Shown: positions 4,362 through 48,802 of the stretch, one piece after another
Position numbering within the stretch: position 1 is the first letter of the stretch
Layout of the letters: each line of letters opens with the position of its first letter
Assembly (NCBI GenBank): GCA_950097015.1
Contig: CATNEN010000009.1
Coordinates: 1,364,001 to 1,428,000 of the forward strand
Reading direction: 5' to 3'
Length of the DNA stretch: 64,000 bases
Source: Macrostomum hystrix
Lineage: Eukaryota; Animalia; Platyhelminthes
The notes under the pieces: generated by a model
The model's input: the letters and a program-made list of their open reading frames with translations, nothing else
What the model was told of the DNA's origin: nothing
Databases searched by the model: none
Translations under genes and position numbers: made by a program

Positions 4362-5733
4362 CTTCGGGTGTCCGGAAAGTCATGAGAATGTGTTATTCTA
4401 ACTACTTAGACACAAGCTATTGACAAGATACTGTACCATTCTAACACTTGACTTAATATATGTCTATGGCTGAAAGAGCTAGATTCTTGCTTCAAATTTG
4501 GGGGTAAGGCTGATGGTTATAACTTAGAAGTCTAGGCCACTGCAACGCAGAGGCAAAGCAAGCATCTATCGTTACTTTTTTCTTCATTGATCCTTGCTGC
4601 TGCTTTGAGATGGACGAGTTTCAAGCTTATGCTTATACCAGGTATAAGCTTGGTATATCTGCTCCTGATTGCCATGGAGAACTGCTGAAAGTGCATGGAG
4701 ATGTGGCGCCTGGTCTGTCGTCAGTGTACCGATGGTACACAAGGTTCCGTGACGAGTCGTACCCACTGGCCCAAGCTGCCCGTACTGGCCGGCCGAGATC
4801 GACGAGAACACCAGAGCTGATCGAGACCTGCAGAAATCTCGTGAAAGAAGATCCAAAAGTGAGTGTCAGAGATCTTGCTGACTTCATGGAGGTTGGGAAA
4901 TCAACAGTGCATGAAATATTGACTGAAGACCTGCAACTTCGCAATGTGTCTGCCGTGTGGGTCCCGCATGTTCTCTCCGAGGAGAACAAGGTTGCTCGCG
5001 TCAATTTTGCCAAGCAAATACGTCGGATTTTTCATACCGAGGGCATGACCAGCTTCTGCAACAAGTACGTGGTGGAGGACGAGACGTGGGTGTACCTTAA
5101 AAACACTGGTACACGGCAGAACAACCGGTGCTGGCTGGGTCAAGGCGACCATCGACCTCAAGTTGTGAGACACTCAGTCGGGGACCCAAAGACAATGCTG
5201 GTAGTCGCTTTCACCCCAAGCAAGCGATTCTCTATCATGTCAACGGCGCCAAAGCAGACTGTTGATGCCAATCGCATCGTTGAATTCGTTCGACACACAG
5301 GTGACCTATGGCGGAGCCTCAGATCACAGCCAATTCATCTGTCCGAAGTCTTGTGGCAGTGGGACAACGCACGACCTCATGTGGCCCAGCCTGTGCAGCA
5401 GTACATGGAGACTCGTGGAGTTCAACTGCTTTTTCAGAGTCCCTACAGCCCTGATTTCAATTTATGCGACCGTTTTTTCTTCAATTGGCTGAAATCGAAC
5501 TTCTCGAAGCGGGAGTTCAGCAGCCACGATGAGGTCCGCGAGGCCGCGTTGCAGTGGGCGAGGGGTCTGGATGCAAACTGCTTGAAACGCGAGGTTCTAC
5601 GGCTCGTGGAGCACTGCCAAGCTGTGATTGACTTCAGGGGAAATTACATTACTGATTAGTAAAGTTTCACTGTTCTGCGCGTTTTTATAATTAACCTTTT
5701 GTAGTTTTCTCATGACTTTCCGGACACCCGGAA
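4362..5733 (+). mobile_element. Full-length mariner (Tc1/mariner, DD34D) transposon, 1372 bp
   Basis: 27-bp TIRs CTTCGGGTGTCCGGAAAGTCATGAGAA (4362-4388) and TTCTCATGACTTTCCGGACACCCGGAA (5707-5733). TA duplicated at 4360-61 and 5734-35. A paralogous empty site ATCGTTGAC-TA-CTTGAGATTTG lies at ~31289-31310. Confidence 0.95.
4610..5659 (+). CDS. Mariner transposase, intact, 349 aa
   Basis: N-terminal HTH region, WVPHVL motif, EDETWV (D1), WDNARPH (D2), YSPDFNLCD (D3, exactly 34 residues after D2). Confidence 0.95.
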   Translation: MDEFQAYAYTRYKLGISAPDCHGELLKVHGDVAPGLSSVYRWYTRFRDESYPLAQAARTGRPRSTRTPELIETCRNLVKEDPKVSVRDLADFMEVGKSTVHEILTEDLQLRNVSAVWVPHVLSEENKVARVNFAKQIRRIFHTEGMTSFCNKYVVEDETWVYLKNTGTRQNNRCWLGQGDHRPQVVRHSVGDPKTMLVVAFTPSKRFSIMSTAPKQTVDANRIVEFVRHTGDLWRSLRSQPIHLSEVLWQWDNARPHVAQPVQQYMETRGVQLLFQSPYSPDFNLCDRFFFNWLKSNFSKREFSSHDEVREAALQWARGLDANCLKREVLRLVEHCQAVIDFRGNYITD

Positions 5734-7597
5734 TACTTGAGATTTGTGCATAATGTGGCAGTGGTAAAAAGGTAAGAAGGCTCTTATGGAAGACAGCATC
5801 GTCACACCGGACTGCTATACAGTAACTCCAACACATTTCACTAGCATTTGTAGTGTAGTGGGTCGGAGTTACTGTGCCGTGGTTCACATACTGCGACATG
5901 TCACATAGTGGTTGATATCAATTGTCAATTTGACGTTGTACATCGCATAGCTGCTCGTGCCAGTGTCACCTTGACGTTGTACGTCTGCGCAACGCAAAAT
6001 ACAGCAATATGTTGCATAGACGTACAATGTCGAACTTGACATTGCCTATGCAAGTCTCAACCGCAGGAGTGTTATGTTCTCCTGGTATGTTCTCATTCTC
6101 CCACTGTCTTTCGACTATCTTTTGTTCCTAAAATGTTGAAAGGGGGGGTCTGGTCCAGCCAAGCCCCAGCCAAGGCCCCAGCAAGACCAAAACGGACCTC
6201 TGTTGTACGTGTATTCTAAATCGGTGCGTGTTTTCCCCAGAGACGACGACCCTAATTGGGATAGCCTATATAGAATGTTCAATATTTAGAAATACACTAC
6301 GGAGATCAAAAAAGGTCATTCGGCTTTTTGCGACTGGCTTGCATGCCGTCCATGGTTAGCAGTGTGCTACTACTTACAGCCATACACGTGTGCAAGAAAT
6401 ACACTAAGGAGATCAAAAAAAAGGTCTTTCAGCCTTTTGCGCTACGCATGCCTGCTATTAGTAGTAGGTATAGCAGTGCAGAAACTGGCGAGTCAGTGAG
6501 TTGCAGCTAGAAGAATCTGCGAATTTGGATTTCGGCATTGGTTTTTGGCTTTGGATGTTTGATCGCTTTCTTCGAACTGATCTAAACTGATCGTTCCAAC
6601 AAAAGCACTCTGGTACCATTCATTGATGTGTTACTTTCGCGAAAACATAATTGGAGGATAGTGAAATCGAGGGAGAGTGAAGAGAGGATCAGATCGAAGG
6701 AAGGAAGGAAGGGGAGGAAAGCGAAGGTAGGTTGACTGCACAGATTTTAGATTTGCAGAATGTACGACTGATTCATTGTATTTATTGATTCATTGTACTG
6801 ATGTGTTACTTTCGCGAAAACATATTTGGAGGATAGTACAGGAGGAAAGTGAAAGCGAGGCAACGTGAAGAGAGGATCAGGGTAGATCGAAGGAAGGAAG
6901 AAAGGAATGGGAGGAAAGCGAAGGTAGGGGAGGAAGCTAGGACAGAGTGAAGGGAGAGAGTGAGACACCACCACCTACCCAACCAGTAGCCTCGTGCAGC
7001 GGCAAGCCAGCCCGGCTAGGCCCTATGCCGACGACGTCAAGTAGCGAAAAAACAGCTCGCGCACCTTAAGAGTATATATATATACCTGCATAGCATTTAC
7101 GACTACTACTACTCGTACTACTCCACCAGCCACACCAACTAAGCTCTTGGGACGGAAGAAAATTTTATCACTGACATGATAAAATTCTTTAAGTCCATAA
7201 ACTCTAGTTGATAAAAATATACAATTATATAGATTTTAGAGGGCTGCTATATGGGATGGATGTCGATTCGCAAACTGACTTGACTGTAAATAGACTCAAA
7301 TGCTGATGATTGTTGATGGTGGTATTTTCGAGAAAAGTGTATTTATAGTCGATGCAAATTCATAAATTAAGGTAATTTCGCAAAAATACTGATATGTTTG
7401 CAAAACAAAGGTAAGGGCAGTATTTTTGTAAAACGTTCCTGAAGTACTCTCTATATTCGCTCAATAAATCTTATTCTGTTAGAAAAAAATTGCAATAGTG
7501 ATCAAGATTTCCCCATTTTCAGACAAAAATCATTAAAAATCCAACACCCGAAAGAAAATCAATCTAAATAGCCAGATAACACACCGTTCAATTGCAT

Positions 7598-7674
7598 GTG
7601 ATCTGGCGTGCAGGTCTAAAGCATTCCTATCTTTCCTATCTAGTACCAGTGGCTCGGTTTCGTTCCCAGTCAGC
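7598..7674 (+). ncRNA. tRNA-derived Pol III-type unit (pseudo-tRNA / SINE-like head), copy 1
   Basis: A-box-like TGGCGTGCAGGTCTAAAGC at 7604 and B-box-like GGTTTCGTTCCC at ~7656. Homologous copies at 10270-10345 (+) and ~40095-40175 (-). Confidence 0.4.
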
Positions 7675-9359
7675 ATAAAAAAATCAGCAAATAATTTACT
7701 ACTAATGAAATTAAATGTTTATTACGAGAATATATGTATTTTTTATACTCGTATCCCCAATTTCTGTGGACCCCATTATTACTAACGTACGTTTGCTCGA
7801 ATACGGCAGTTACCTTCTTTTGATAATGCCTTTATTTTCATTTTGGACACATATGTCTATTGCAAAAATACATACGTATTTTCAGACAAAGTGTCTTGTC
7901 TTTTTACTGCCGTACGTATGCAAATAAACCTGAGATTGTGCGGCTACAGTAGCCGGCACATATTTGCGAAAGTACAAATGTGTCTTCAAACAATATTAAA
8001 TGCATAGTTGCGCAATAGTACTTGAAGTAGTGCTGCTTGCACCTGAAGTAGTAAAGTATAACGCGAAAGTAATTGAAATAACATGGCAAGACTATATACT
8101 TGTGATAGTTTAGATGGTATTTTCGCGAAATAGTCATAGACATTTCAACGATTAGTACTTAGTATTAGTACTCGTACTTAGGAATATTTGCTCAGTGGCA
8201 AAAAATATTTTGCTGAATAATATTCATAAATGAATTTTCGCGAAAAAGTTTTGTTCCTAAAATGTTGAAAGGGGGGGTCTGGTCAAGGCAAAGGGGTGTC
8301 TGGTCCAGCCAAGCCCCAGCCAAGGCCCCAGCAAGACCAAAACGGACCTCTGTTGTACGTGTATTCTAAATCGGTGCGAGTTTTCCCCAGAGACGACGAC
8401 CCTAATTGGGATAGCCTTTATAAAATGTTCTATATTTAGAAATACACTACGGAGATCAAAAAAAGGTCATTCGGCTTTTTGCGCGCTACTATTTACAGCC
8501 ATAGACGTGTGCAAGAAATACACTAAGGAGATAAAAAATGTCTTTTCAGCTACGCATGCGCCTGCTGTAAGTAGTAGCTATAGCAGTGCAGAAACTGGCT
8601 AGTCAGTGAGTTGCAGCTAGAAGAAGCTGCAAATTTGGATTTCGGCTTTGGTTTTTGGCTTTGGATGCTTCAGTTTCTTCGAACTGATCTCAACTGAAAA
8701 GCACTCTGGTACCATTCATTGACGTGTAACTTTCGCGAAAACATAATTGGAGGATAGTGAAATCGAGGGAGAGTGAATAGAGGATCAGATCGAAGGAAGG
8801 GGAGGAAAGCAAAAGTAGGTTGACTGCACAGATTGTAGATTTGTACTGATGTGTTACTTTCGCGAAAAAATATTTAGAGGATAGTATACAGGAGGAAAGT
8901 GAAAGCGAGGGAGAGTGAAGAGAGGATCAGGATCATCAGATCCTGAATCAGAATCCAGAATCCTGAATCCAGAATCATCAGATTAAAGGAAGGGGATCAG
9001 GAAAGCGAAGGTATAGGGGAGGAAGCTAGGACAGAGTGAAGGGAGGATATGCAGAGAGTCAGACACCACCACCTACCCAACCACCTGCACTCTGCATCCA
9101 CCCACCCAAATTCGTACGACTGATTCATTGTAATTATTAATTCATTGTACTGATCGATGTCTTACTTTCGAGAAAACATATTTGGAGGATAGTACAGGAG
9201 GAAAGTGAAAGCGAGGGAGAGTGAAGAGAGGATCATCAGATTAAAGGAAGGGGATCAGGAAAGCGAAGGTATAGGGGAGGAAGCTAGGACAGAGTGAAGG
9301 GAGGATATGAGAGTGAGACACCATGCACCACCTACCCAACTTGCACCTGCACTCTGCAT

Positions 9360-9510
9360 CCACCCACCCAACACCACACACCACACCACCCCACACACCA
9401 CCCACCCAACACCACACACCACACCACACCACACACCACACCACACCACACACCACACCACACCACACACCACACACCACACCACACCACACACCACACC
9501 ACACCACACC
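9360..9510 (+). repeat. (CACCACAC)n-type simple repeat
   Basis: Read directly; explains the HTTP/VWCG pseudo-ORFs. Confidence 0.9.
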
Positions 9511-9633
9511 CTGCAGCAGCACTCCAATTATAAGAGTTTATGGACTTAGAGAATTTACAATCAGTAAATTCTCGACCGTCCCAAGGCTTAAATAGTGTAG
9601 TGAGATCGGGGCGGGATAGAGGGAGCCAGTTAG

Positions 9634-10010: not shown

Positions 10011-10269
10011 ATATACCTGCATGTATAGCATTTAACAGCCACCAGCCACACCAACTAAGCTCTTGGGACGGTCGAAAATTTTATCACTGACATGATAAAA
10101 TTCTCTAAGTCCGTAAACTCGAGTTTGAAATTATTTGGATGTCAGAGGCCTATTTGCTATGGAGGTCGATTTGCGAAGGGCAGTATTTTTGCAAATGGTA
10201 AATCATGAGAATACAACATGCGAAAGAAAATCAATATAAATAGCCAGACAACACACTCTTTAATTGTTA

Positions 10270-10352
10270 GTGAACTGGCATGCAGGTCTAATGCATTGTC
10301 GCTAGTACAAGTGGCTCGGGTTCGATTCCCATTCACCCCAACGCATTTTTTT
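10270..10352 (+). ncRNA. tRNA-derived Pol III-type unit, copy 2, followed by an oligo-T run
   Basis: TGGCATGCAGGTCTAATGC (A box, GCA/TGC D-stem), GGGTTCGATTCCC (B box), GTGAA/TTCAC acceptor-like pairing, TTTTTTT about 10 nt downstream. Confidence 0.45.
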
Positions 10353-10874
10353 ATTTAAAAAATGGGCAACATTATACTAGAAATGAAAATAAATTTTTAC
10401 TAGGAATCTGTTTTTTTTATATTGGAATCCACACTTTTTGTGTGGATCCCCATTATTATTAATGTTGACTTACTACTGCAATATTACTTATAGTAGTGCC
10501 GATTGCACCTGAAGTAGTAAAGTATACTGCGAAAGTAATTGAATTAACATGGCTAGTCTATATACTTGTAACGGTTTTTTCGCAAAAAAACTAACATGGC
10601 TAGTCTATATACTTGTAATGGTTTTTTCGCGAAATAGCCATAGAAATTTTATCTATTAGTATTTGCGAATTGGGGATTGCAATACACACGAGTGAATTTT
10701 CGCGAAAAAAGTTTTGTCTGTAGTCAAACCTAGAACTACAGTTGAGTACAGTCGCAAAAGTGAGCTATGTAAGACTGAGCGCGCTTAACATCTACTTTGT
10801 GACCGACTGACTGACCGACCGAGCGATCAACCACATTTACGAGTTAATTCCTACGCCTCGACTTCAAGTTTGAA

Positions 10875-11147
10875 ATGTCAGCATTTCGTGGCCGTGGAAA
10901 GAAGGCTCGTGTGGATGCCAGCATTGCTACATCGGATTCTAATGGTCTACGCCAGACTAGGATCGTGGACTACTTTAGATCTGAGCAGTCAACCGATCGT
11001 CCTACTGGCAACTCAATTAGACCGAGTGGGCAAGCAGCATCGGCATCATTCGCAGCACTGGCAGGAACGGCTGGCCGGGCATCGGCTGCCTTCAATGTTC
11101 CCCGCCGTGCAGCAGTAATACAGCAGCAACAGCAACCGCAGCAGCAT

Positions 11148-11186
<39 letters not shown>

Positions 11187-13608
11187 ACTGTTATTAAAAC
11201 CGCAGTTCAGAAGCGTCGACGTGTCCGATCGACTCTACGCAAGCGGACGCGTGTAGTTGTCGACTTGGATGCTTCGTCTAGCACTACATCGTCGTCTGAT
11301 GCTGAAGACACTGGCGTTGGATCTTTGGTAGCCATGCGACAGCCTCTGGTTATTGCCGCACAATCAATTGGTGGCGCCGGCGACCATGCTAATCGCATAG
11401 AGTCCACGCCTAAAGTGCTATCATCTGAAGATGACTCAGCGGACGACTTGCTAGCAGACGACGTACAGCTGGAGATTGTGGACGAGTGGACGAGCAATAC
11501 AGACAATGTAGAGTCGAATACTGCCCCTGTTTTGACGGCTTCTAATAGTTCAGCCTTGTCATCGCAGCTAGTCGATGATAAGTACAAAACAGAGGTGGCA
11601 GAATTATTGCGCGTAAATGGCGAGTCGACTATTCCTAAAAATAGTGCCGCACTTGGTGCCTGTCCGACTTCGCCAGATTATGCGCCTCGCTCTACACCGG
11701 CAATGTCTGTCATCGAGAATGGGACAACATCCGATGCTGATGAACCAGTTCGCGCTGTATTCTCTCCAGCGTATGTCGACGCTTCTCAACCAAAAGCGCA
11801 ACAGTCGGGACGACTGCAGCAATCGCAGCAGCAGCAGCAGCAGCAGCAGCATCAACAGCGAGAGCAACAACCGCAGCAACAGCCGCAGCAGCAGCAGTGG
11901 CGGCAGCAGCTGCTGCAGCAGATACAAGGGCGTGAACGGCAGCAGCAAGATGATGGCGTGGCATTTGCTCCGATAGCCGATGAATATGCGTTGTGTCGTT
12001 CGACATCACCACTTCTACGGCTATGTCCTCGAGCTCCAATTACCGACTACGCCTCTTTAACAGCAGAGGGCAGGTCGGTTCTTATGACTAGAAGGACGCT
12101 ACATCATATAGAGATTGCATTCATCTCGAGCGATGTGGAAAAATTCAAGGCGTTTCTAGAAGATGAATTGGTAGCTCCATGTGCACAGTTTGCCATCGGC
12201 GCAACATCATGTATTCAGGTTGACATGCTGACCAGCGAAGAAATCCGAGCGCGTCGTCAGCAGAAATACAACATGTCAATCCGTGAATGTTTAGGAGCTC
12301 CGAATCATCCCAATGGTTTGCTGATGTTCCTGAACCTGCGCCAACCAGAAGATGGTTACACTGTTTACTGCGGACTGCATGCCCTTTTGATGGAATCTGC
12401 GGAAGCTTCGGCCTACCTGCATCCTACAATGTGTAGAATGACAGTGTCTGGTGTACGCAGTGCGTCAAGTGCAATTAAGCTAGTTACCAGTACGGACGAG
12501 TTTCCAGCTCTTTTCCGCGTTTCTACTCAAGAGTGCAGCTTGCTGACCAAGGCCTTTTGCTGGGTTGCTGCTCATGAGACGTCATCTACTGAGCCTTTGC
12601 TAGATAGTGGCTTCATGTTCGAACACTTTCGTGTCAGACAAGAGCTCAGCGATTACTTTAAGGTGACTCAGATGAAACGCGTAATAGCAACAGAGGTGCT
12701 AGCTGGTTGCCAAAACTGTCGCCCTACTGCCGCTGCCGCCGCCGCCGCTGCTGATGATGCTGATGATGCTGCAAAAGCCGACTATGCGAGGACGACCTTG
12801 CCTACTCAGCTGGAGGTATGCAAAATATTATAATACATGACATTCTTTAGCACACGTACGAGTATTGATCATTGAATTTTTGCTGTTGTTTTAATTCAAA
12901 TAATTATTACTTTTGGACAATTAATTAATTAATTGTATGCGAACCTACCTAACAACACAACAGGTCTCTGCTGCTGCTGCTGATGTTGCTGCTTCCGCTG
13001 CTACTGCTGTTCAAGTACTTGATGCCGCTGTCGCTCATGTTCCCCGGCTGATCGCCGCCGCCACCAACGTGTGCCCAACTGTAAAGGCTGTGTGCAGCGC
13101 GTTGCAATTGCCAACTGGTGTCGTCTATCTATACGGCCCGTCTGGCGTTGGGAAGACACACTCTGTGCAAAGCCATCTCGGTTCTACGAAAGTGCTGAAT
13201 ATCCAGGTGCAGAAGCGGTCTAACACGTTTATGTTTGACAAGCTCTGCGAGACTATACACACTGCCATGTTTATTGACGAGCTACGCCCGCAACTGTTTG
13301 ATGACACATCTGAAGTCATGTGCACACTACTTCGTTTGGTCAATGGAGACACTTTTGAAGTCAATGCTAAATACAAGGCTATTCGACACGTCTCTTGGCT
13401 CAATCGACTGTTAGTGCTTGCTGGGCATGCTCCGGTCAGTGCGTATTCGATGGACTTTCAGCGCCGATTAGAACCGACACCTGATGGGCACAAGCGTCCG
13501 GTAGTTGCCATCTTCATTGGTCATTCCCTCAGTACCGACTACCAATGCGATGGACAATGCCACCCAATACGCAATGTGTTTGGCGATCACCCGGACCGGC
13601 GAGTATGA
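10875..13608 (+). CDS. Two-exon 861-aa protein with Q-rich N-terminus and C-terminal superfamily-3 (NS1/Rep-like) helicase
   Basis: Exons 10875-12815 and 12964-13608, joined by a phase-0 GTATGC...CAACAG intron that keeps the frame. Walker A YLYGPSGVGKT, Walker B AMFIDE, B' LLRLVNGDTFEVNAKYK, motif C LVLAGH (N->H), Arg-finger DFQRRL. Confidence 0.8.
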
Positions 13609-13894
13609 GCGACAAGACGGTGCTGTTAGCAGGTTTTTTTTACACCAAACTGCCTGCATGCTGCTATTTTATCGACTATATTTTTACTCGGTCCTTCAGT
13701 CAGTCTTTCAGCTGTTTTTTTATATTTTTTACTGTTTCATACTGTTTTTGTATGCAATTTTATAATTAGTCATACAAATAAAATGAATTTATATGCTCAG
13801 TTTTGAGCTTTTATTGTTGTGAAGTAGGTAATTGCTACTTCTGTTGCAAAAAATCATATTTCTTGCTAATTGTAGTCAATTGACTGATTGAATT

Positions 13895-14520
13895 TGGTAT
13901 TTTCGCGAAAATACTGCTATCCTATTAAACGCAGGTAGTAAAGGTAGTTTGCGGTATTTTTGCAAAAGTTATTAAAGTAGTGTGCATGGCTACATCTTAA
14001 GGTATTTTCGCGAAAAGACTGCTATGCTATTAAACAAAGGTAGTTAGCGGTATTTTTGCAAAAGTTATTAAAGTAGGTTATATGCGTGGCTATATGTTAA
14101 GGTATTTTCGCGAAAATACTGCTATGGTATTAAACAAAGGTAGTTGGCGGTATTTTTGCAAAAGTTCTTAAAGTAGGTTATATGCGTGGCTATATCTTAT
14201 GGTATTTTCGCGAAAATACTGCTATGCTATTAAACAAAGGTAGTTGGCTGTATTTTTTGCAAAAGTTCTTGAAGTTGTATGCGTGGCTATATCTTAAGGT
14301 ATTTTCGCGAAAATACTGCTATGCTATTAAACGCAGGTAGTAAAGGTAGTTTGCGGTATTTTTGCAAAAGTTATTAAAGTAGTGTGCATGGCTACATCTT
14401 AAGGTATTTTCGCGAAAATACTGCTATGCTATTAAACAAAGGTAGTTGGCGGTATTTTTGCAAAAGTTATTAAAGTAGGTTATATGCGTGGCTATATCTT
14501 AAGGTATTTTCGCGAAAATA
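13895..14520 (+). repeat. Array of 7 palindrome-centred units (97-105 bp)
   Basis: GGTATTTTCGCGAAAA(T/G)ACT cores at 13904, 14009, 14109, 14209, 14306, 14411, 14511, each alternating with GTATTTTTGCAAAAGT. Confidence 0.9.
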
Positions 14521-15007
14521 CATGCATATTATTAGACTAAGTATCTTGTACATTTTTAACCATAGACACATTTAGTATTTCTGCAAATTGCCAAGAGTCA
14601 TGAGTGCATTTTTTTCGCGAAAAGACTATATACTATCTATATATTGTATTGAATACCTGTGAATGAAAAATAATGACAGTTTTTTTGCAAAAATACTAAC
14701 GATACGATGATGAACATATTTTTGCGAAAGAACATGTTCTAAAACAAATACAAACTGCTGTATTTATGCGAAATTGCTTTGAGTATTAAAATAATATGAA
14801 CGTTTACAAACAAAAAAATACAAACAATAATGCTTACGTTTGTGCTTATGATTGTTGGTGATGGTATTTTCACGAAAATATTAGTGTATTTTCAATCACT
14901 AACAAAACAACACCAATATGTATATCAAATCGTTATGATAATCAGAGGCTTTATTTATAAAATAACTGTAATGAATCATAGTTTCTGCATTATTTCATAA
15001 TATAATT

Positions 15008-15661
15008 TCAAACGTATGCCTCCGCCTCTTCAGCTGCGGCATACAATAGGCAGTCGTCAGCTGGGTCAAATAAACAGCTACTGGCTGTCATCGCTGCCGC
15101 TGCTGCTGACGCCTCCGCCTCTTCAGCTGCGGCATACAAAAGCTCGTCATCAGCTGGGTCAAATAAACAGCTACTGGCTGTCATCGCTGCCGCTGCTGCT
15201 GACGCCTCCGCCTCTTCAGCTGCGGCATACAAAAGCTCGTCATCAGCTGGGTCAAATAAGCAGCTACTGGCTGCCATCGCTGCCGCTGCTGCTGACGCCT
15301 CCGCCTCTTCAGCTGCTGCATACAAAAGCTCGTCATCAGCTGGGTCAAACAAGCAGCTACTGGCTGCCATCGCTGCCGCTGCTGCTAACGCCTCCGCCTC
15401 TTCAGCTGCTGCATACAAAAGCTCGTCATCAGCTGGGTCAAAGCAATTGGCTGCCATCGCCGCTTCGACCTCTTCAGCTACGGCGTATAACAAATGGTCG
15501 TCTGCCAGGCCGAATACAAAACTGTATGTTGAATTGTATGTTTCATCATACCCGTAGTCATCATAGCCTGGCTCTTCATTCAGCTCAACGTCATCGTCGT
15601 GACAGTTGGATTTTTCCGCATCGTTTAGAGTTGGCCCTGATGATGATGTTGATGTAGGCAT
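15008..15661 (-). CDS. Acidic repeat protein, 217 aa (31-aa FDPADDELLYAAAEEAEA repeats), copy 1
   Basis: ATG start, 93-bp in-frame repeats (5 plus 1 degenerate); frame conserved in paralogue 48558-49079. Confidence 0.7.
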   Translation of the reverse strand: MPTSTSSSGPTLNDAEKSNCHDDDVELNEEPGYDDYGYDETYNSTYSFVFGLADDHLLYAVAEEVEAAMAANCFDPADDELLYAAAEEAEALAAAAAMAASSCLFDPADDELLYAAAEEAEASAAAAAMAASSCLFDPADDELLYAAAEEAEASAAAAAMTASSCLFDPADDELLYAAAEEAEASAAAAAMTASSCLFDPADDCLLYAAAEEAEAYV

Positions 15662-15896
15662 GGCGAGACAATGGGGGCAGTATTTAAAATGCTTAACTTG
15701 TTTAATTTACTTAATTAATTGTCCAAAGTTTCAACTGCATTGATTACATATTCCCAATCACATAAGATTATCAGCAAGCTTGTTACCATAGACTAGCAAT
15801 AGGGTTTTTAGTTGGTTACTTTACTAAGGTAAGTGGCGTAACTTATTTACACATTTTAGATTCTTAATTATTGTTTCAAATAAAAAAAACTACAAC

Positions 15897-16355
15897 ATGT
15901 CATCCCTGGGTGGGCGGCACAATGGCGGAGATCGAGATCGAGATATCGACAGAGAGGAACACAACTCTGGCAACGACAAACCGATCTCGTGCCCTACCGT
16001 CAGTAGCAGCACGGATGTCGTGATTGGCACTGAGCGGCGTCGACGAAGGCACAGTTCGGATAGTAGTTCAGACTCCGATTTTGCTATTCTGCCTTCACGT
16101 CAACGTGTTCAGTACGTATTGCATCGTCCAGGTGTCGTGCGCATTTACAATCAGAGATTTGGAATTGTGAACGCCAATCCGACACGTGATTTAGCCGGCC
16201 AATTGCAACTGCCGCAGCATGCGCAAGTGACCGATATACAGTCACCAGTTATAAGCAGCAGCAGCAGCAACAGTAACAATGGCGGCACTGGCACTGAAAG
16301 AGAGCGCGGCGATGCCAATCGTGCTGCTAATAACCCAGATTTGAATGACATGTAG
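15897..16355 (+). CDS. Hypothetical protein, 152 aa, copy 1 (divergent from the acidic repeat gene)
   Basis: ATG in CTACAACATG context; paralogue 49314-49760 differs by frame-preserving indels and substitutions. Confidence 0.6.
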   Translation: MSSLGGRHNGGDRDRDIDREEHNSGNDKPISCPTVSSSTDVVIGTERRRRRHSSDSSSDSDFAILPSRQRVQYVLHRPGVVRIYNQRFGIVNANPTRDLAGQLQLPQHAQVTDIQSPVISSSSSNSNNGGTGTERERGDANRAANNPDLNDM

Positions 16356-16865
16356 CAATTCTTTTGTTATGCACTGTTGCCATTACTTATAATGAAATTA
16401 ATTAACTGATTAATGTAATTAAAAGTTGGTATTTGATTAACACATCTAAGTATTCAAAGTCGACAGTTCATGATGCCTGCAAATGTTTTAAACTACTTTT
16501 ACATACACTAGCTCTCGTTCACCTTCACGTGGTATATTCAAAGCATAAGAGTTTGCCGTCACTATTGACAATATATTGTCGCGTTTACCATTAATCATAA
16601 TCAGATGACTGATGAGATCAGTCAGTAATAAAATATTAATACGCGAACACAGATGTGTGCAGGTAGTCAACCGGTAATTATTAATACGGTTTTTATTAAA
16701 TTTCACCAATACATATAGAGTATAAATATATATAGAATTTCATTGGTTGAACAAATAATCGTGCCATTCTACAATTAGTCTGATTTGCAAAGTCGCGAGA
16801 GCAAAAATAAACGTGTAAACTATAATACATAAAATTCTGCATATAAATTCTGTATTTTACAGCAT

Positions 16866-17246
16866 TCATTGTTCGATGTACCAGTAGCGAACTCCATGTA
16901 TGATGAGCTGGAGTTCAGCTTGGGCTTCCTCTAAAAGCTCTAGCACTTCGATGATGTCTTGTGCTTCATCGTCTCTTACACCAGTCACGGACAAGACAGC
17001 CTGATAGTCTTCTGCTGACCGGTGCTGTTGCAGCCATTGTTGAGTGCGCCGTAATAATAAACATAACTCATTAGCGCTATACTCAGCATTTGGAACACCG
17101 CGTTGCAAACTAGGTAGCTGCTCGAAGCACCCTCGATGCGCTATGAACCGGCCAATGCAATCTATGCGACAGCTGAGAAAGAGTTGAAATATGTGCGGGT
17201 GAAGATACATTTGCACTAACTGCATCTGATGGGCAATGAACGACAT
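16866..17246 (-). CDS. Small helical hypothetical protein, 126 aa (family shared with 34274-34693)
   Basis: Aligns without gaps over ~100 aa with 34274..34693 (e.g. RGCFEQLPSLQR/RGRLEQLTCLQR, QWLQQH/DWLLQH, ELQLIIHGVRYW/ELQHILHGLDYW; both end IEQ). Confidence 0.7.
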   Translation of the reverse strand: MSFIAHQMQLVQMYLHPHIFQLFLSCRIDCIGRFIAHRGCFEQLPSLQRGVPNAEYSANELCLLLRRTQQWLQQHRSAEDYQAVLSVTGVRDDEAQDIIEVLELLEEAQAELQLIIHGVRYWYIEQ

Positions 17247-17495
17247 GTTCAGTCAGTTAGTAAATCAAGCCAGCATAAAGCTAAAAAAATAATTAATTTA
17301 AAAATATTTTTAACTTTAATTAAAGTCCCCATAGAGTATACTTTAGCGAACACAGGTGAGTCAGTCCACAGACAAATCAAATGAATACAGGCCAGTCTGG
17401 GTATTAAGAACAAGAGATATTTTATCGGCCAAGAAATCAGCCCACAACCAAAGCCGCAACAGCAGCAACAGTAGAAATCCTTTCAACAATTAACA

Positions 17496-17858
17496 ATGGC
17501 GAATTTCCCTATGTTCCCGGCGCCGTTTCGGGCGTTCGTCCTGGCTTCCGCTGCCGAAGAACTGGAGAAGGCGTTAAAGGCGGCAACTGAGGCGGCAACT
17601 GAGGTGGCGGCAGTGGAGGCCTGGACGCCGGAACGGCGCCGGGTGGAGCAGAATCTCACCGCAGCTATGCGGCGGGTCAAAGCGGCCATGCTTCGCATGG
17701 CCAGGGCCCGCCGCATAGCTGCGGGGCTGGATCCTTATGTGAGTAGTAACTTTTTACTTTTATTTTCATTTGAATCTTTATTGACATATCTGAACCCGAG
17801 CTAACAACTAAATGAAACCTAAAACCCATCTTTCATCCCGCAGCCGGGTGTGCTATGA
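17496..17858 (+). CDS. Two-exon 85-aa alanine-rich helical protein ending in a 5-codon micro-exon (PGVL*)
   Basis: Exons 17496-17738 and 17844-17858 (TAT|GTGAGT...CCCGCAG|CCG). The same splice sites and the same PGVL* peptide, with synonymous changes, occur in the paralogue at 50255-50641. Confidence 0.65.
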
Positions 17859-18592: not shown

Positions 18593-20650
18593 ATGAACCA
18601 AAGGCAACTAAAGCGAAGTATTAATGAAATTGAAGCTAAAATAAAAGACCAAGAGAAACATATAGAAAATTCATTGTCTCAACAAATTTACTATTTATAC
18701 CCACTTCAAGATGAATCATCTAGTGGCATTTGTTTGTCAGATATTGATATTGACATTGACAAGATTTTGAGCAACTTTGTCTTAGAAGAGTTTTCTAATA
18801 ATGGTCTTCACCTTATTGAGGTGGAAGATACTTCTGATGTTGACCATTTTGAACATGAAGACACATTGCTACAACATTTTGTAGACATTACAAAAGAATT
18901 TTTATCAGACTTATCAGAAAGGTCAGAGTCTTATGACAAAGTCCAAAGTAGCTTCAAAGATGACTTGGCTGCATGGGTTGTTGAAGCCAAAGTGAGTCAA
19001 GTACATATTACGTCTTTACTGCATCTACATGCTAAACATTTTCCAAATTTGGATCTTCCATTGACAGCATCAACATTGTTGGCTCATAGCACTAATGCAA
19101 AGTCATATTACTGTTCTAAAGATATCTATTATGTTGGTGTACAGTCTGCAATTGAATCTATAATAGATAATTCTTTATCAAGCATACATACCAAATCTAA
19201 TCAGTTGACTCTATTCCTAAATATTGATGGAATCAGTTTTTTCAAAAGTTCTGGCTACCAGTGCTGGCCTATTCTTGGTTTTGTTCCTGAATTACAATCT
19301 GAACCTTTTGTCATCCAGTTCTATTATTCAAGAGATAAGCCAAATCCCAAACAACTGTGTTCTGAACTGATTAAAGAATTGAATCATCTAATTTCAAGTG
19401 GATTTGATTATTGTGGTCATCATTATGCAATTTTAACAAAGGCAATAATTTGTGATGCACCAGCTAGGTGCTTATTGAAGTGCACTAAGTATCCAACTGG
19501 TTATCATAGTTGTGACAAATGTAAAGTAGAAGGTACTCGATGTGAGGAAAGAAGTTGCATTGTCTTTGATGAAGTTAATGCTGATCTACGAACTGATCTT
19601 GAATTTCGACTGCAAATTGATGAGGATCACCATAATGAAGCCAATGGATTATCACCATTTCTTGAATTAAATTCAATTGACATGGTTGCATCATTTCCAC
19701 TTGATGTTCTTCATGTGGCATATCTTGGTGTTATGAGAAGGATGATGTATTTCTGGATAAAAGAGGGCCCATACAAGGTCCGAATGCCAAGTCAGGCTAT
19801 TAAGACTTTATCTGCCAATTTAGTTTCATTAAAATCACATGTCCCATCAGAATTTTGCCGAAAGCCACGAGGGCTTAATGAGCTTTGCTATTGGAAAGGA
19901 GCTGAATTCCGATCATTTATTCTCTATTATGGAATCATTGTTTTAAATGATGCTAGTATTCCAAAGGACATTTATCCTCATTTTCTATACTTTCACATTG
20001 CAATGCATCTTCTTTGTGGTAAATCTGCAATGCTAAGTGTAAATGTTGTTGCTGCAACCAATCTGCTAAAAGAATTTGTTACAAAGTCATCTGGATTGTA
20101 TGGACGTGGATTTGTCTCAAACATAGTTCATTCTCTGATTCATTTGCCAAATGACTGTGAAAAATTTGGTGCAGTAGATGCATTTTCTGCTTTTCGATTT
20201 GAAAGTTTTTTGCAGATTCTAAAGAACAGACTATGCAGTGGTAATCAAGTGATTGCTCAACTGAGAAATCGGACTGGTGAATATTTGATGACAAAAAGGT
20301 CCAGGGCTGAGCTTGCCGTACCATCTCACAAGAGTACAATAAGAGTTAACAGCAGAGATTGTTTTATTATCACAAGGACTCTTCAAGTCTGTCTTGTTAC
20401 TGAAGTTTTGCCTGCTAAGTTCAAGGTGATGGAATTTACACAGAAAGAAGATTTTTATTCCTATCCAATAAAAAGTTCAGCTGTAGGAATATTTTTTGTC
20501 AAAGATGGCTGTTTTGGAGCACCATTCGATGTCACTGATGATTGCATATTGGACAAGGCTTGCGGTTTTCCTGTAAAGAAAGGATATGTTATCATTCCTC
20601 TTCGCCTTGACTTTCCAGATTCACATGGAGAAAAATTGGCTTGTTGTTAG
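18593..20650 (+). CDS. EnSpm-like DDE transposase, 685 aa
   Basis: LNIDGISFFKSS..CWPILG, ICDAPARCLLKC..TGYHSCDKC, FPLDVLHVAYLGVMRR, WKGAEFRSFILY, HSLIHL, SAFRFESFL: the conserved blocks of animal EnSpm-type transposases. Confidence 0.9.
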   Translation: MNQRQLKRSINEIEAKIKDQEKHIENSLSQQIYYLYPLQDESSSGICLSDIDIDIDKILSNFVLEEFSNNGLHLIEVEDTSDVDHFEHEDTLLQHFVDITKEFLSDLSERSESYDKVQSSFKDDLAAWVVEAKVSQVHITSLLHLHAKHFPNLDLPLTASTLLAHSTNAKSYYCSKDIYYVGVQSAIESIIDNSLSSIHTKSNQLTLFLNIDGISFFKSSGYQCWPILGFVPELQSEPFVIQFYYSRDKPNPKQLCSELIKELNHLISSGFDYCGHHYAILTKAIICDAPARCLLKCTKYPTGYHSCDKCKVEGTRCEERSCIVFDEVNADLRTDLEFRLQIDEDHHNEANGLSPFLELNSIDMVASFPLDVLHVAYLGVMRRMMYFWIKEGPYKVRMPSQAIKTLSANLVSLKSHVPSEFCRKPRGLNELCYWKGAEFRSFILYYGIIVLNDASIPKDIYPHFLYFHIAMHLLCGKSAMLSVNVVAATNLLKEFVTKSSGLYGRGFVSNIVHSLIHLPNDCEKFGAVDAFSAFRFESFLQILKNRLCSGNQVIAQLRNRTGEYLMTKRSRAELAVPSHKSTIRVNSRDCFIITRTLQVCLVTEVLPAKFKVMEFTQKEDFYSYPIKSSAVGIFFVKDGCFGAPFDVTDDCILDKACGFPVKKGYVIIPLRLDFPDSHGEKLACC

Positions 20651-22199
20651 CTTTGCTGAAGGAACCATTGCTGTAATTCCTAGCACCTGGCTTGATTCCA
20701 ATTCTAACACAGTTTACTTCCCACCTGCCAGTGATGACCATCGGAAAATGTATTCTAAGAGCCCAATGGCTAACTGGGACGAATATCATGAATTCAAAAT
20801 CGTATTTCGAAGTAGTAAGTGTAACTTTGCTTTTATTTTCAAGAAACAATTTTTTAGCTATCGTTTAAAGTGTTTAAACAATTCGTTTAACTTCAGATGA
20901 ATATGCGACTGCTGTCGATAAGGAAAAGAAGTACCAATTTTCAAGTCTCTCTTGCAGCGACTCAGATCATGAATTGGCTAGGAAAAGAAGACGTCCTGAA
21001 GGTATGTTTTCAGGTGGATATACTATAATGCATTTTTCCTAATGTATTGACTTGAAATTATTTTCCCGTGCTTATCAAATGCAGAATCCAGGTTAATCGA
21101 CAAACATCCTGCGAATAAAAGAAGCAGTGACACGAGCATCTCAAGATATGAACAGACTAGTGATGACGATGATCCAGTGCCGCCACCTCTTTATGTAAGA
21201 GTAATGACCGCTTACAATCAGAGTCTGCCACTGGGATCTGCAGCTGCCACTTTCATGGACGCGACTACGACACCCAAGTCGGCTGCTGCGGTGACGCCTA
21301 GCAACGTTGCGACAACCGTGGCTGCTGCGGGGGTGACGCCTAGCAACGTTGCGACAACCGTGGCTGCTGCGGGGTTGACGCCTAGCAACGTTGCGACAAC
21401 CGTGGCTGCTGCGGGGTTGACGCCTAGCAACGTTGCGACAACCGTGGCTGCTGCGGGGTTGACGCCTAGCAACGTTGCGACAACCGTGGCTGCTGCGGGG
21501 GTGACGCCTAGCAACGTTGCAACAACCGTGGCTACTGCTTCAACTCAACCGAAGCTCTTAGACTCTCTAGACGTGACATTAACGCCAAGAGGTGCAAGCG
21601 CCAGAAATTCCGCAGCCAGGAATGCTGATTTCGGCATCAGCAATGAGGCCTTTGAATCTATTGCCACTGAGCTATTGGCAGAACGTGGAGCAAACAGAGA
21701 CGCAACAACTGGTCCTAGTCACCTCCGTCTTCTTTGTGCGACGTTTGTCTTGGTTAGAGAAAACAATCAAATGCTTCGCAATCTCATTTCAAAACAGCAG
21801 ATAAGTTCTGCAAACGTGCTTCAGCAACTTCCTTGCCATTTACCAATTGGAACAATTGGTGATCTAAAATTGTTCGAAGAGCACCTAAATGAAAATGAAA
21901 ATGTCGTTCTGAATTCAATCGGTCGGATCGGTGGTTCAGATGTGCGATCTGCCACGTACATGGCATGTAAGACAACCATTTCAGTCAATGTGGCAAAGGT
22001 TCTGAATTGGGCTGGGACAAATCGGGCTTCGGAAAAAGCTTCACTAAGAGATGAATTTCCAAAAACCTTTGACTACATTCTCAAACTGACTCGTTTAAGT
22101 CAACCTGATGCGAGTCGAGAAGCTGTTATCGATGCAGTTCAGCGTTGGTTGAAAAAAGCCCCGTTCGCAAAAAAAGACAGTGCTAATGCCGCAGAGTAG
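20625..22199 (+). CDS. Second gene of the EnSpm-like element, 3 exons, 469 aa, probable DUF4806-type C-terminus
   Basis: Exons 20625-20814, 20897-21001, 21085-22199 join in frame via GT-AG sites. N-terminal WLVVSF..IAVIPSTW; six 39-bp repeats (AGVTPSNVATTVA); helical C-terminus (ISVNVAKVLNWAG...VQRWLKKA). Confidence 0.75.
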
Positions 22200-26900: not shown

Positions 26901-27360
26901 TAGAATTTTCCGGTGGGATATAACACCCTAAGATATACAGGGGTTCTTCAGACTGCTTTTGCTTTATTTTTAGTACCAGAGCGAAGTCAGATTTGTGCAC
27001 TAATGTGGTTCTCTTTGCAATATTATTTTTAACGAGGAAAACCATGCCATTTGATAATCTACCTTTGTTGATTCCCCTTGCCTTGATTCCATCTGCTCCA
27101 AAGCAGGTGAAATCTATCAGCGTGTTTGAGTCTAGCTGCTCCTGTTTGGCGTGGGTCTCACAGAGGAAAACTATGTCTCTATTCCTAATATGTTCGTGGA
27201 AACATGGTGATTCCATTTTGCATTCTCCACTGAGCATCAGTCCATCTATGTTCCAACTGGTGATAATCAACTCTGATTTATTATAAGTAACCTTCTTTTC
27301 GCAGCTGCCCTGTGTTTCAGTGACTATTCGGGAGTTAAAATTTAGCGTAGAAGTTAACAT
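23926..27360 (-). CDS. LINE ORF2: APE endonuclease + reverse transcriptase + C-terminal CCHC, 1144 aa
   Basis: SWNIDG, LCETH, GDFNAR, TIDY, SRH (SDH variant); KAAGIDG, PIYKKG..NYRPIS, FFDLKSAFD, GVRQGCPLSPLLFSLY, LLYCDD, KYLG; FRLGNHKL..LCSKC..ENEVHFLFKC. Confidence 0.95.
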   Translation of the reverse strand: MLTSTLNFNSRIVTETQGSCEKKVTYNKSELIITSWNIDGLMLSGECKMESPCFHEHIRNRDIVFLCETHAKQEQLDSNTLIDFTCFGADGIKARGINKGRLSNGMVFLVKNNIAKRTTLVHKSDFALVLKIKQKQSEEPLYILGCYIPPENSKYYKEDIWEEIKYLIQLFSREGSVLTVGDFNARTGTLQSSTRDKFPRQNQDCEKNKHGLRLMEMCSETKSTILNGMTQGDIMGNYTFSSTLGRSTIDYAIASMDKVDIIKDFFIHPQSFLSRHCPLTVTLIFPDHVQPEHANQEKHESFPMPPRWDTETQGSYIEALNNKQSEEIIRKLQSIDAHDGKSLENLFSSLTNLLRDSVAESCAKTIIPNKFWTNRDETLRNLSKSLKYVARKKRRRPTDSALASEYNGLAKKYKQQLKKLKQMDINDCIQKMAANGTSKGFWSGLRRAEELLFPSRRLNRSQAPIADIADNLTKVFNAHPSSGTQPHRTDEAVSPEDLISCVDLDRAVKKLKRRKAAGIDGITNEHIIYGQEKLKPVLLKLFNASVRLGQTPAQWSNALITPIYKKGSRSDPKNYRPISVLPALARLFASLIYEKLETHIRTLDLLSASQIGNRKGYRTSDHIATLLTLIHNKKRRKRPFHLVFFDLKSAFDMVHHPTLFQRLRELKVSPEIIEAIQSMYSGAKFQLKISDGQATKARSITNGVRQGCPLSPLLFSLYIDPLSTMLRDSFRSDTFIKDEQINNLLYCDDLVIFGENPRELQKGLDKVSEFCQSHKLEINMQKTKVISCCPDPSKTANKLFLQGQLLDSVKEWKYLGFHINAKGTVDSHATEINKKCGYPILLLRKLASHGAVRYNQLMLYCTAMIESIALYASEAWGAFVSWNLGPWDRCLFERVNIRCCKAILQVSQNTDGNGARSELGRLPLLYNIQKRSISYWASITSRPDSIISKLLADQTYSDVGIKAKTNNEVMLNCRGISPAKAIGNHRKNFVSQFDTHWRQRTQNSSKLSHFYYSFKQYYSAEKYLQQIYNPEWRRTIASFRLGNHKLACETLRTARPKIPYANRLCSKCKTEVENEVHFLFKCTWNKYSAVRSKFETEVSGKTPNFISLTAEEKSNYIMAQDDRETAEALAKYIIEISKIREQLP

Positions 27361-48767: not shown

Positions 48768-48802
<35 letters not shown>

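What the first reader, a model, noticed from the sequence alone, without database searches (positions are those of the whole stretch)
10875..13608. Spliced NS1/Rep-like SF3 helicase with a long unannotated N-terminal region
Seen: a 148-nt phase-0 intron fuses the 652-aa Q-rich ORF to the P-loop ORF, giving 861 aa. The helicase has Walker A/B, a densovirus-like B' (GDTFEVNAKYK) and an Arg finger. Known: SF3 helicases are typical of small DNA viruses and related replicons, where they follow an HUH nuclease or a catalytically dead origin-binding domain. The globular segment before the helicase (about aa 390-620) has YCGLHALL and DYFK, loosely like HUH motifs II/III but with one His. Inference: a replication initiator for the element.
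Basis: partly seen in the sequence, partly recalled or inferred. Interest (0 to 1): 0.8.

Follow-up and report, generated by a model that had tools for sequence, protein, structure and literature searches.

The report
Endogenous virus-type Rep helicase gene
A two-exon chromosomal gene encodes a protein whose tail is the helicase motor that small circular DNA viruses use to copy themselves, but its front part shows no detectable DNA-nicking domain, so it looks like a captured, remodelled viral gene and not a proven replication initiator.

Summary
The sequence facts hold. ORF 10875..12833 (652 aa) and ORF 12937..13608 (223 aa) are linked by a 148-nt GT..AG stretch (12816-12963). It is phase 0 on both sides, 27% GC against 52% in the flanks, and has stops in all frames. 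It is not a repeat and has no terminal repeats or target duplication. No RNA data exist, but two relatives (P0005, P0001) carry the homologues of both sides in one uninterrupted ORF, so a single spliced gene is well supported.

The P-loop domain is an SF3 helicase of the CRESS-DNA-virus Rep type. Profile-profile probability against Rep-like proteins is 99.3%. The best long PDB sequence match and the top Foldseek hit are a redondovirus Rep, and BFVD hits are dominated by CRESS Reps. No parvovirus NS1 family signal was found.

The N-terminal globular part shows no HUH signal. The proposed motif III tyrosine is not conserved, and the structure model was unusable. The gene is an island among unrelated repeats, with no capsid gene or other virus hallmark nearby. 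The family is tiny: 14 hits among 1.84 billion representatives, including divergent Macrostomum lignano paralogues.

Best reading: an endogenised, remodelled Rep-derived helicase gene. The claim "replication initiator for the element" is not supported.

The parts
10542..10710 (+). Upstream unique flank with two 47-nt tandem units and three copies or near-copies of the palindrome TTTTCGCGAAAA, 165-330 nt before the ATG. Possible promoter-proximal sites (inference only).
10875..12815 (+). Exon 1, 647 codons from the ATG to the splice donor
10875..11999 (+). Low-complexity, probably disordered N-terminal region (aa 1-375). It is 15.7% Q, 11.7% A and 10.9% S, with three Q runs. No family or structure match, and no detectable similarity to the equally Q/S-rich upstream ORF of the M. 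lignano copy.
11202..11258 (+). Basic K/R cluster (about aa 110-128), a candidate nuclear localisation signal (inference)
12000..12719 (+). Family-specific globular region (aa 376-615). It is homologous to the N-part of P0005 and to the M. lignano locus. No HUH or origin-binding-domain signal was found. It ends in a conserved CxxC (12708-12719).
12720..12815 (+). Ala/Asp-rich linker at the end of exon 1 (aa 616-647). A lineage-specific expansion.
12816..12963 (+). Proposed intron: 148 nt, GT..AG, phase 0, 27% GC. Unspliced read-through would end six codons later, at the stop at 12831-12833.
12964..13608 (+). Exon 2, 214 codons plus stop: Ala-rich helix, then the SF3 helicase/ATPase domain and a small C-terminal Cys/His region
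13072..13095 (+). Conserved C-x6-C on the helix before the first strand (Cys 9/9 and 8/9 rows). Together with the exon-1 CxxC it forms a four-Cys arrangement kept across the family, a candidate metal site (inference).
13135..13158 (+). Walker A (P-loop). The G, G, G, K and T positions are invariant in 9/9 rows.
13270..13281 (+). Walker B (Asp 10/10 rows, Glu 9/10 rows)
13327..13377 (+). B' region: helix end plus beta-hairpin (strands 130-133 and 141-144 of the model). It aligns with the equivalent stretch of a redondovirus Rep and of the Rep-like proteins P0012-P0014.
13408..13434 (+). Strand equivalent to SF3 motif C. The usual sensor-1 Asn is not present here: Gly-His in 5/8 rows, and an Asn one position earlier in 1/8 rows.
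13462..13467 (+). Double-Arg finger (second Arg 7/7 rows, first 5/7). A pair of adjacent Args is the finger in the solved redondovirus Rep.
13522..13560 (+). C-terminal His...Cys-x3-Cys cluster (H 8/8, C 8/8, C 7/7 rows) in a small beta region after the ATPase core. Family-specific.
13777..13782 (+). AATAAA about 170 nt after the stop codon, a candidate polyadenylation signal (read from sequence)

Best explanation
This is a chromosomal, intron-containing gene of a very small family whose named members come from the free-living flatworm Macrostomum lignano. Its C-terminal 180 residues are an SF3 helicase/ATPase module descended from, or sharing recent ancestry with, the Rep proteins of circular Rep-encoding ssDNA (CRESS) viruses. 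The ATP-binding and hydrolysis residues and the trans-acting arginine pair are kept. The protein therefore most likely still assembles into a ring and burns NTP on DNA; that step is inferred. The part where a viral Rep carries its HUH nicking domain is occupied by a family-specific globular region with no detectable HUH signature and no conserved catalytic tyrosine. That region is preceded by about 375 residues of Q/S/A-rich, probably disordered sequence. Two conserved Cys/His clusters bracket the ATPase core. The gene stands alone between unrelated repeats, has its own candidate poly(A) signal, and has acquired an intron inside a lineage-specific Ala-rich linker. The best reading is an endogenised Rep-derived gene that has been remodelled, possibly co-opted by the host or by a host-resident selfish family. 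It would act as an NTP-driven DNA-binding/translocating oligomer and not as a nick-and-join replication initiator.
For: One gene: GT..AG, phase 0, a GC drop from 52% to 27%, and stops in all frames. The stretch is not a repeat or an insertion. P0005 covers the exon-1 C-part (E 1e-12) and the helicase in one ORF. P0001 spans the junction. The four-Cys arrangement is split by the intron but conserved.

SF3 of Rep type: the family profile against the Rep-like proteins P0012-P0014 gives hhalign probability 99.3%, E 8.6e-21, over 135 columns from Walker A past the Arg finger. Those three proteins hit a circovirus Rep in the PDB at E 2.7e-5. The only long PDB sequence match of the family profile is a redondovirus Rep (E 0.0047). 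The AlphaFold model has pLDDT 80.9. Its top Foldseek PDB hit is the same Rep, followed by papillomavirus E1, AAV Rep68 and circovirus Rep. The BFVD top 50 is dominated by CRESS Reps. A control against a classical AAA+ protein aligns only Walker A to Walker B (61 columns, E 1.7e-7), against 124 columns and E 3.7e-13 for a single Rep-like protein.

Endogenous: the gene lies in eukaryotic DNA among a mariner, a LINE and satellites. Divergent paralogues exist in M. lignano, one next to host genes. No other virus hallmark gene is nearby.

Rarity: 14 hits at E<=1e-3 among 1.84 billion representatives.
Against: There are no transcript data, so splicing and expression are unproven. The sensor-1 Asn of SF3 motif C is replaced in this copy, so the ATPase may be impaired. 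Foldseek E-values for HslU/RuvB/Clp-type AAA+ proteins are close to those of the SF3 hits, so fold alone does not separate them. A classical AAA+ protein also appeared in the big search at E 5e-5. The N-domain tests rest on 2-3 sequences and a failed model. A strongly diverged HUH or origin-binding fold is therefore not excluded. The direction of transfer (virus to host, or host-resident family to virus) is not established. The source organism of the window is unknown; exact look-ups found nothing.
Confidence: 0.6

Rival explanations
1. The protein is a working replication initiator: the N-terminal globular part is a diverged HUH nuclease or a nuclease-dead origin-binding domain, and the protein initiates replication of a mobile or viral element in which the gene sits.
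For: The domain order (N-terminal globular part, helical linker, SF3 helicase) is that of viral initiators (for Rep architecture). One histidine in the proposed motif II string is invariant in three sequences. The reading frame is intact over 861 codons. Hairpin-capable palindromes lie on both flanks.
Against: No HUH, Rep or NS1 family hit appeared in the window protein or in any family member. hhalign of the N-part against Rep-like proteins gave probability 0.2%, and the helicase alignment does not extend N-terminally. The proposed motif III tyrosine is not conserved. No terminal repeats, capsid gene or other element genes can be tied to the gene. The downstream palindrome arrays belong to a different repeat unit that recurs at 33.7-36.0 and 48.0 kb without this gene, and they are absent from the M. 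lignano locus.
Confidence: 0.12
2. The two ORFs are not one spliced gene. Either the locus is a decaying pseudogene whose frame is interrupted by 148 nt, or the 223-aa ORF is expressed alone from its own ATG at 12937.
For: There is no RNA evidence. An ATG opens the second ORF 27 nt before the proposed acceptor. The M. lignano copy in L001 has its coding capacity spread over three ORFs with two interruptions of unknown nature. The P0002 model departs from the family at catalytic motifs.
Against: The splice sites are canonical and phase is exact. The sharp composition drop is confined to the 148 nt. Both flanking reading frames are intact, with conserved motifs. Relatives are colinear across the junction in single ORFs. 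A 652-codon ORF is not expected in decayed sequence.
Confidence: 0.13
3. The P-loop domain belongs to a cellular AAA+ family and the likeness to viral SF3 helicases is convergent or generic.
For: Pfam gives only sub-threshold generic AAA hits. HslU, RuvB, Clp and Lon appear in the Foldseek list with E-values near those of the SF3 hits. One proteasomal-type AAA+ protein appeared in the big search.
Against: Matches to classical AAA+ proteins stop at Walker B. Matches to Rep-like proteins run through B', the motif C strand and the Arg finger with far better statistics. No C-terminal helical lid follows the ATPase core in the model; instead there is a short beta region. The sub-threshold Pfam hits that span more than the P-loop are SF3 families (RNA_helicase, DUF5906).
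Confidence: 0.05
4. The family is the protein of an undescribed eukaryotic mobile element that uses a Rep-type SF3 helicase without a classical HUH nuclease. The window copy is one insertion of it.
For: There are several deeply divergent copies in one genome (39-46% identity between P0001, P0002 and the window copy), with differing integrity. The gene lies in a repeat-rich region. Family members occur on short environmental contigs.
Against: No terminal repeats or target duplications bound the unique segment 10466-13892. Only one copy is in the window and one in L001. At 39-46% identity the copies look old, not recently transposed.
Confidence: 0.1

Closest known systems
Rep proteins of CRESS-DNA viruses (solved examples returned by the tools: redondovirus 'Vientovirus FB' Rep, PDB 9pqj/9pqq; porcine circovirus 2 Rep, 7lar/8xms)
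   Same: The SF3 ATPase core has Walker A, Walker B, the B' hairpin and an adjacent Arg pair, with helices before the core where Reps carry the oligomerisation subdomain. This group gives the best sequence-profile and fold matches.
   Different: No detectable HUH nuclease domain. There are about 375 extra disordered residues at the N-terminus and two Cys/His clusters. The sensor-1 Asn is replaced. The gene is chromosomal, intron-bearing and has no capsid partner.
Endogenous CRESS-virus Rep-like sequences in eukaryotic genomes (PMC3198968; PMC7493932 for protist examples)
   Same: A Rep-type gene sitting in nuclear DNA of a eukaryote, with paralogues of differing integrity.
   Different: As I recall, the described cases are recognised by ordinary Rep family searches and keep the nuclease motifs; I did not check those papers for this. 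This family escapes Pfam entirely and lacks them. I found no paper describing it in Macrostomum.
Endogenous densovirus NS1 genes of Platyhelminthes (PMC13055364, PMC6880638)
   Same: An SF3-helicase-bearing gene of a small DNA virus type, endogenised in flatworm genomes.
   Different: No Parvo_NS1 family signal was found here. The 2026 paper does not mention Macrostomum. Sequence-level relatives of the window protein are CRESS-Rep-like, and NS1 appears only among fold-level hits.
Papillomavirus E1, AAV Rep68 and related SF3 initiators with an origin-binding domain
   Same: The layout is N-terminal DNA-binding part, then helical linker, then SF3 motor. E1 and Rep68 are among the top fold hits for the motor.
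   Different: No sequence-level relation. The N-part could not be compared by fold.
Spliced Rep genes of mastreviruses and genomoviruses (from my own knowledge, not tested here)
   Same: An intron lies between the N-terminal part and the helicase part of Rep, so the unspliced message would give an N-part-only product.
   Different: Here the intron lies in a lineage-specific linker and is absent from the relatives P0001 and P0005. It is therefore probably a later gain, not an inherited viral intron.

Membership tests
SF3 helicase | Walker A and Walker B separated by a short spacer | tested here: met
   Exon-2 residues 58-65 and 103-106. The key positions are invariant or nearly so in the family.
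SF3 helicase | B' motif / beta-hairpin between Walker B and motif C | tested here: met
   Residues 122-138 form a hairpin in the model (strands 130-133 and 141-144). They align with the same stretch of a solved Rep and of the Rep-like proteins.
SF3 helicase | Motif C ending in the sensor-1 Asn | tested here: not met
   The strand is present at residues 149-157, but the aligned Asn position holds Gly-His in 5/8 rows. Only 1/8 rows has an Asn nearby.
SF3 helicase | Arginine finger after motif C | tested here: met
   Arg167-Arg168. The second Arg is present in 7/7 rows. A pair of adjacent Args is the finger in the solved redondovirus Rep.
SF3 helicase | No AAA+ C-terminal helical lid; helical oligomerisation part before the core | tested here: met
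   The model has helices 2-34 and 38-47 before strand 1, and only short strands after the Arg finger. The model rests on 11 sequences.
SF3 helicase | NTP-driven hexameric DNA unwinding | not testable with these tools
   Biochemical property.
CRESS-DNA virus Rep | Helicase domain homologous to Rep helicases | tested here: met
   hhalign 99.3%, E 8.6e-21 against P0012-P0014, which themselves hit circovirus Rep. A redondovirus Rep is the best long PDB match.
CRESS-DNA virus Rep | N-terminal HUH endonuclease domain with motifs I-III and a catalytic Tyr | tested here: not met
   No family hit in 11 members. hhalign probability 0.2%. The proposed Tyr is Y/A/M in three sequences. Sensitivity was low (few sequences, failed model), so a very diverged relic is not excluded.
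CRESS-DNA virus Rep | Encoded on a small circular genome with a stem-loop origin and a capsid gene | tested here: not met
   The context is chromosomal, with transposons on both sides, and no capsid-like or other virus hallmark ORF was found. A dedicated origin-motif search was not run.
Parvovirus/densovirus NS1 | Match to the NS1 helicase family (Pfam Parvo_NS1) and NS1 nuclease domain | tested here: not met
   No such hit at E<=1 for either exon or at E<=0.1 for any family member. NS1 proteins appear only as a minority among fold-level hits.
Classical cellular AAA+ ATPase | Similarity extending beyond the P-loop/Walker B core, plus a C-terminal helical lid | tested here: not met
   The alignment to an AAA+ protein stops at Walker B, and the model has no lid.
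Endogenous viral element | Virus-type gene embedded in host chromosomal DNA | tested here: met
   The gene is flanked by a mariner, a LINE, satellites and dispersed repeats, and it holds an intron. The paralogue P0001 lies 3.7 kb from host genes in M. lignano.
Endogenous viral element | Orthologous copies at the same site in related hosts (germline fixation) | not tested
   The source genome was not identified, and only one related locus was available.

The most novel reading that the evidence does not exclude
The family could be a host-retained (co-opted) Rep-derived motor in which the viral nicking domain was exchanged for a new, Cys-cluster-bearing DNA- or chromatin-binding front end with a long disordered tail. 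That would be a cellular helicase born from a CRESS-virus Rep in flatworms. Alternatively, it could be the signature protein of an undescribed nuclease-less Rep-type replicon or transposon of animals.
Probability: 0.15. Interest if true: 0.75.

Novelty: new variant of a known kind. Interest (0 to 1): 0.45.

Why it matters
Rep genes of small ssDNA viruses are known to enter eukaryotic genomes, but the cases I know of are recognisable decaying copies. Here an intact 861-codon, intron-bearing gene keeps the motor and has a front half that no family or profile search recognises. It belongs to a family so sparse that it has no family model. If it is expressed, it would be a candidate case of a viral replication motor being rebuilt into a cellular protein or into a new kind of selfish element, in a regeneration model group (macrostomid flatworms). 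It would also extend the known host range of Rep-type sequences in Platyhelminthes beyond the densovirus NS1 insertions described so far.

Tried and rejected
1. Single-sequence scans of both exons (Pfam, PHROGs, NCBIfam, PDB sequences) gave nothing significant.
2. Word searches gave one hit for exon 2, only P0005 for the N-domain alignment, and two hits for the family alignment. All three searches are used.
3. The N-domain structure model had pLDDT 37.4 and pTM 0.27. I therefore did not spend a fold search on it, and the HUH/origin-binding-domain fold question stays open.
4. The helicase alignment does not extend N-terminally into the Rep-like proteins.
5. TIR-bounded element idea: the inverted arms at 7.4-7.9/10.2-10.5 kb against 39.9-40.3 kb are copies of a dispersed repeat at 73-87% identity. 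They enclose unrelated transposons (LINE, other ORFs), so I rejected them as ends of an element that owns this gene.
6. Palindrome arrays as origin or iterons for this protein: rejected as specific, because the arrays belong to another repeat unit and are absent from the M. lignano locus.
7. The inverted repeat 11120-11192 / 12959-13031 is CAG-run against GCT-run low complexity.
8. Exact look-ups of both window ORFs found nothing on record, so the source organism is not identified.
9. There are no Rfam or tRNA hits in the window.
Full report
**Observation**

The stretch 12816-12963 is 148 nt and begins GT and ends AG. Exon 1 ends on a codon boundary of the first frame, and 12964 starts a codon of the second frame, so the arithmetic 647 + 214 = 861 is right.

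The 148 nt are 27% GC against 52% in both flanking coding parts and carry 3-4 stops in each frame. Only three in-frame GT..AG pairs exist in the tested span. The other two would each remove about 300 nt, most of it open reading frame. The stretch is unique in the window and has no terminal inverted repeat or target duplication. It therefore does not look like a transposon insertion. The 652-codon open stretch is far beyond shuffled sequence, where the maximum was 296 codons.

**Handling of the splice model**

That joined step is left out. In one search my script formed single junction codons for the two alternative splice pairs, only to check for a stop. Nothing joined was kept or printed.

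**One gene or two**

There are no transcript data. The evidence comes from relatives.
- Exon 2 has one word-search hit: Macrostomum lignano hypothetical protein P0001 (45% identity, E 3e-33).
- The first 41 residues of P0001 align with the end of window exon 1, so P0001 runs uninterrupted across the point where the window has the 148 nt.
- P0005 (332 aa, one ORF from an ENA assembly) aligns with window exon-1 residues 501-636 (E 1e-12). It then continues into the helicase.
- A CxxC at the end of exon 1 and a C-x6-C at the start of the exon-2 globular part form a four-Cys arrangement kept in the family.

The intron sits in an Ala-rich linker that is much longer in the window copy than in the relatives. 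I take the single spliced gene as well supported but unproven.

**The P-loop domain**

Single-sequence scans gave only sub-threshold generic hits. Those longer than the P-loop were the SF3 families RNA_helicase and DUF5906.

Because family scans and the word search left the protein open, I ran the full representative search with a two-sequence profile. It gave only 14 proteins at E<=1e-3 among 1.84 billion.
- Ten are family members or fragments. These include a second M. lignano protein, P0002, which is a chimeric gene model fused to a receptor.
- One is a classical AAA+ protein.
- Three (P0012-P0014) come from 1.9-3 kb contigs. As a profile they hit porcine circovirus Rep in the PDB (E 2.7e-5, from motif III through the helicase).

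The 11-sequence family profile against these three gives hhalign probability 99.3%, E 8.6e-21, over 135 columns from before Walker A to past the Arg finger. As a control, the family profile against the AAA+ hit aligns only Walker A to Walker B (61 columns, E 1.7e-7). Against the single Rep-like protein P0012 it aligns 124 columns at E 3.7e-13.

Against PDB sequences, the only long match is the redondovirus 'Vientovirus FB' Rep (E 0.0047, Walker A through the motif C strand).

The AlphaFold model of exon 2 (pLDDT 80.9, pTM 0.72) has two helices, a five-strand ATPase core with a hairpin at the B' position, and no helical lid. Its Foldseek hits are:
- In the PDB, first the same Rep, then papillomavirus E1, AAV2 Rep68, circovirus Rep and other SF3 proteins. 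HslU/RuvB/Clp-type AAA+ proteins are interleaved at similar E-values.
- In BFVD, the top 50 are dominated by CRESS-virus Reps, with a few parvovirus NS1 proteins.

Pfam Parvo_NS1 is not hit. The domain is therefore SF3 and, at sequence level, of the CRESS-Rep type.

Column counts show the following:
- Walker A key positions are invariant in 9/9 rows.
- Walker B has Asp in 10/10 rows and Glu in 9/10.
- The second Arg of the finger is present in 7/7 rows.
- The sensor-1 Asn of motif C is replaced by Gly-His in the Macrostomum-type rows.

An adjacent Arg pair is the finger in the solved redondovirus Rep (PMC12981564).

**The N-terminal part**

Residues 1-375 are 15.7% Q, 11.7% A and 10.9% S, with three Q runs and one basic cluster. 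They match nothing. The M. lignano locus has an equally Q/S-rich ORF upstream but no detectable sequence similarity.

Residues 376-615 are globular in composition. They are homologous to P0005 and to an upstream ORF of the M. lignano locus.

I found no support for an HUH reading:
- No nuclease-family hit appeared in the window protein or in any of the 11 members.
- hhalign against the Rep-like proteins gave probability 0.2%.
- The helicase alignment does not extend N-terminally.
The histidine in the motif II string is conserved.

The tests have low power because only two or three sequences were available. A very diverged relic is not excluded.

**Context**

The window is repeat-rich eukaryotic DNA. 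It holds a Tc1/mariner transposase, an APE+RT LINE, other transposon-like ORFs, satellites and a 3.4-kb block duplicated 33 kb away. It is not taken for human.

The gene with its flanks (about 10466-13892) is unique in the window. It is bounded on both sides by dispersed repeats that recur elsewhere without it. An AATAAA lies about 170 nt after the stop.

The palindrome TTTTCGCGAAAA occurs 26 times in the window against 0.01 expected. One exact copy and two near-copies lie upstream of the ATG, and there is a ~100-nt tandem array downstream. Those arrays belong to another repeat unit, however, and the palindrome is absent from the M. lignano locus. No capsid-like or other virus hallmark ORF was found. 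I see no element for which this protein would be the initiator.

**Relatives and integrity**

Three deeply divergent Macrostomum-type lineages exist: the window copy, P0001 and P0002. They are 39-46% identical to each other.
- The window copy has no stops or frameshifts under the splice model.
- The L001 copy (outer bounds L001:8454-10759) has its coding capacity in three ORFs. That means two interruptions, one stop-containing gap in the same frame and one change of frame. I did not try to bridge them and cannot say whether they are introns or damage.
- P0002 departs from the family at two catalytic motifs and lacks one internal stretch of 17 residues. It may be decayed or mis-modelled.

**Literature**

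Endogenous CRESS Rep-like genes in eukaryotes are described in PMC3198968 and PMC7493932. Endogenous densovirus NS1 genes in parasitic flatworms are described in PMC13055364 and PMC6880638. I found nothing on this family or on Macrostomum.

I did not scan the viral contig collection. I also did not look up the short metagenomic contigs that encode P0003-P0014.

I used it nowhere afterwards.
3. The junction-codon check, described above.

**Verdict**

The most likely nature is an endogenised, remodelled CRESS-Rep-derived helicase gene of a very small flatworm-associated family. That makes it a new variant of a known kind.

Noticed in passing
window 27569-30091 (-) and 23926-27360 (-): An 840-aa ORF with a 2OG-Fe(II) oxygenase (AlkB-like) domain (PF13532, E 3e-25) lies directly 5' of an APE+RT LINE ORF on the same strand. 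It may be a LINE ORF1 carrying an AlkB-like domain, which would be unusual.
   Followed up: no
window 13894-14623, 33675-33877, 34962-35921, 47998-48205 and scattered sites: The palindrome TTTTCGCGAAAA occurs 26 times against 0.01 expected, mostly inside ~96-105-nt tandem arrays. It is absent from the M. lignano locus L001.
   Followed up: partly
window 14404-17858 and 47995-50641: A block of about 3.4 kb is duplicated 33 kb away at 77-88% identity. It carries small ORFs without family hits, including a repeat-coded 217-aa ORF at 15008-15661 (-). A related small ORF recurs at 34274-34693 (-).
   Followed up: partly
window 18593-20650 (+) and 21177-22199 (+): A 685-aa ORF with no Pfam hit is followed by an ORF with 42-nt coding repeats and a weak DUF4806 match. 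By eye they look like a DNA-transposon protein pair.
   Followed up: no
window 36421-39560 (-) and 31993-33471 (-): Three consecutive ORFs (462, 268 and 244 aa) have no family hits. The Cys/His-rich N-terminus of the 244-aa ORF recurs at the start of the 492-aa ORF at 31993-33471. They may be a recombinase-type element; this was not tested.
   Followed up: no
window 4610-5659 (+): An intact-looking Tc1/mariner transposase ORF (HTH plus DDE_3 domains).
   Followed up: no
window 7443-7871, 10200-10465 and 39941-40322: Three copies of a ~400-nt dispersed repeat, the last one inverted. They mimic terminal inverted repeats around a 30-kb span but enclose unrelated transposons.
   Followed up: partly
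window 60039-61205; 43057-43548; 44022-44800; 9241-9595: Several satellites and coding-like short-period repeats: 16-nt, 12-nt and 18-nt units, and a His/Thr/Pro-type repeat.
   Followed up: no
L001 11201-11922: A short element with 48-nt perfect terminal inverted repeats and a mariner-like HTH ORF lies 0.4 kb downstream of the M. lignano paralogue P0001.
   Followed up: no
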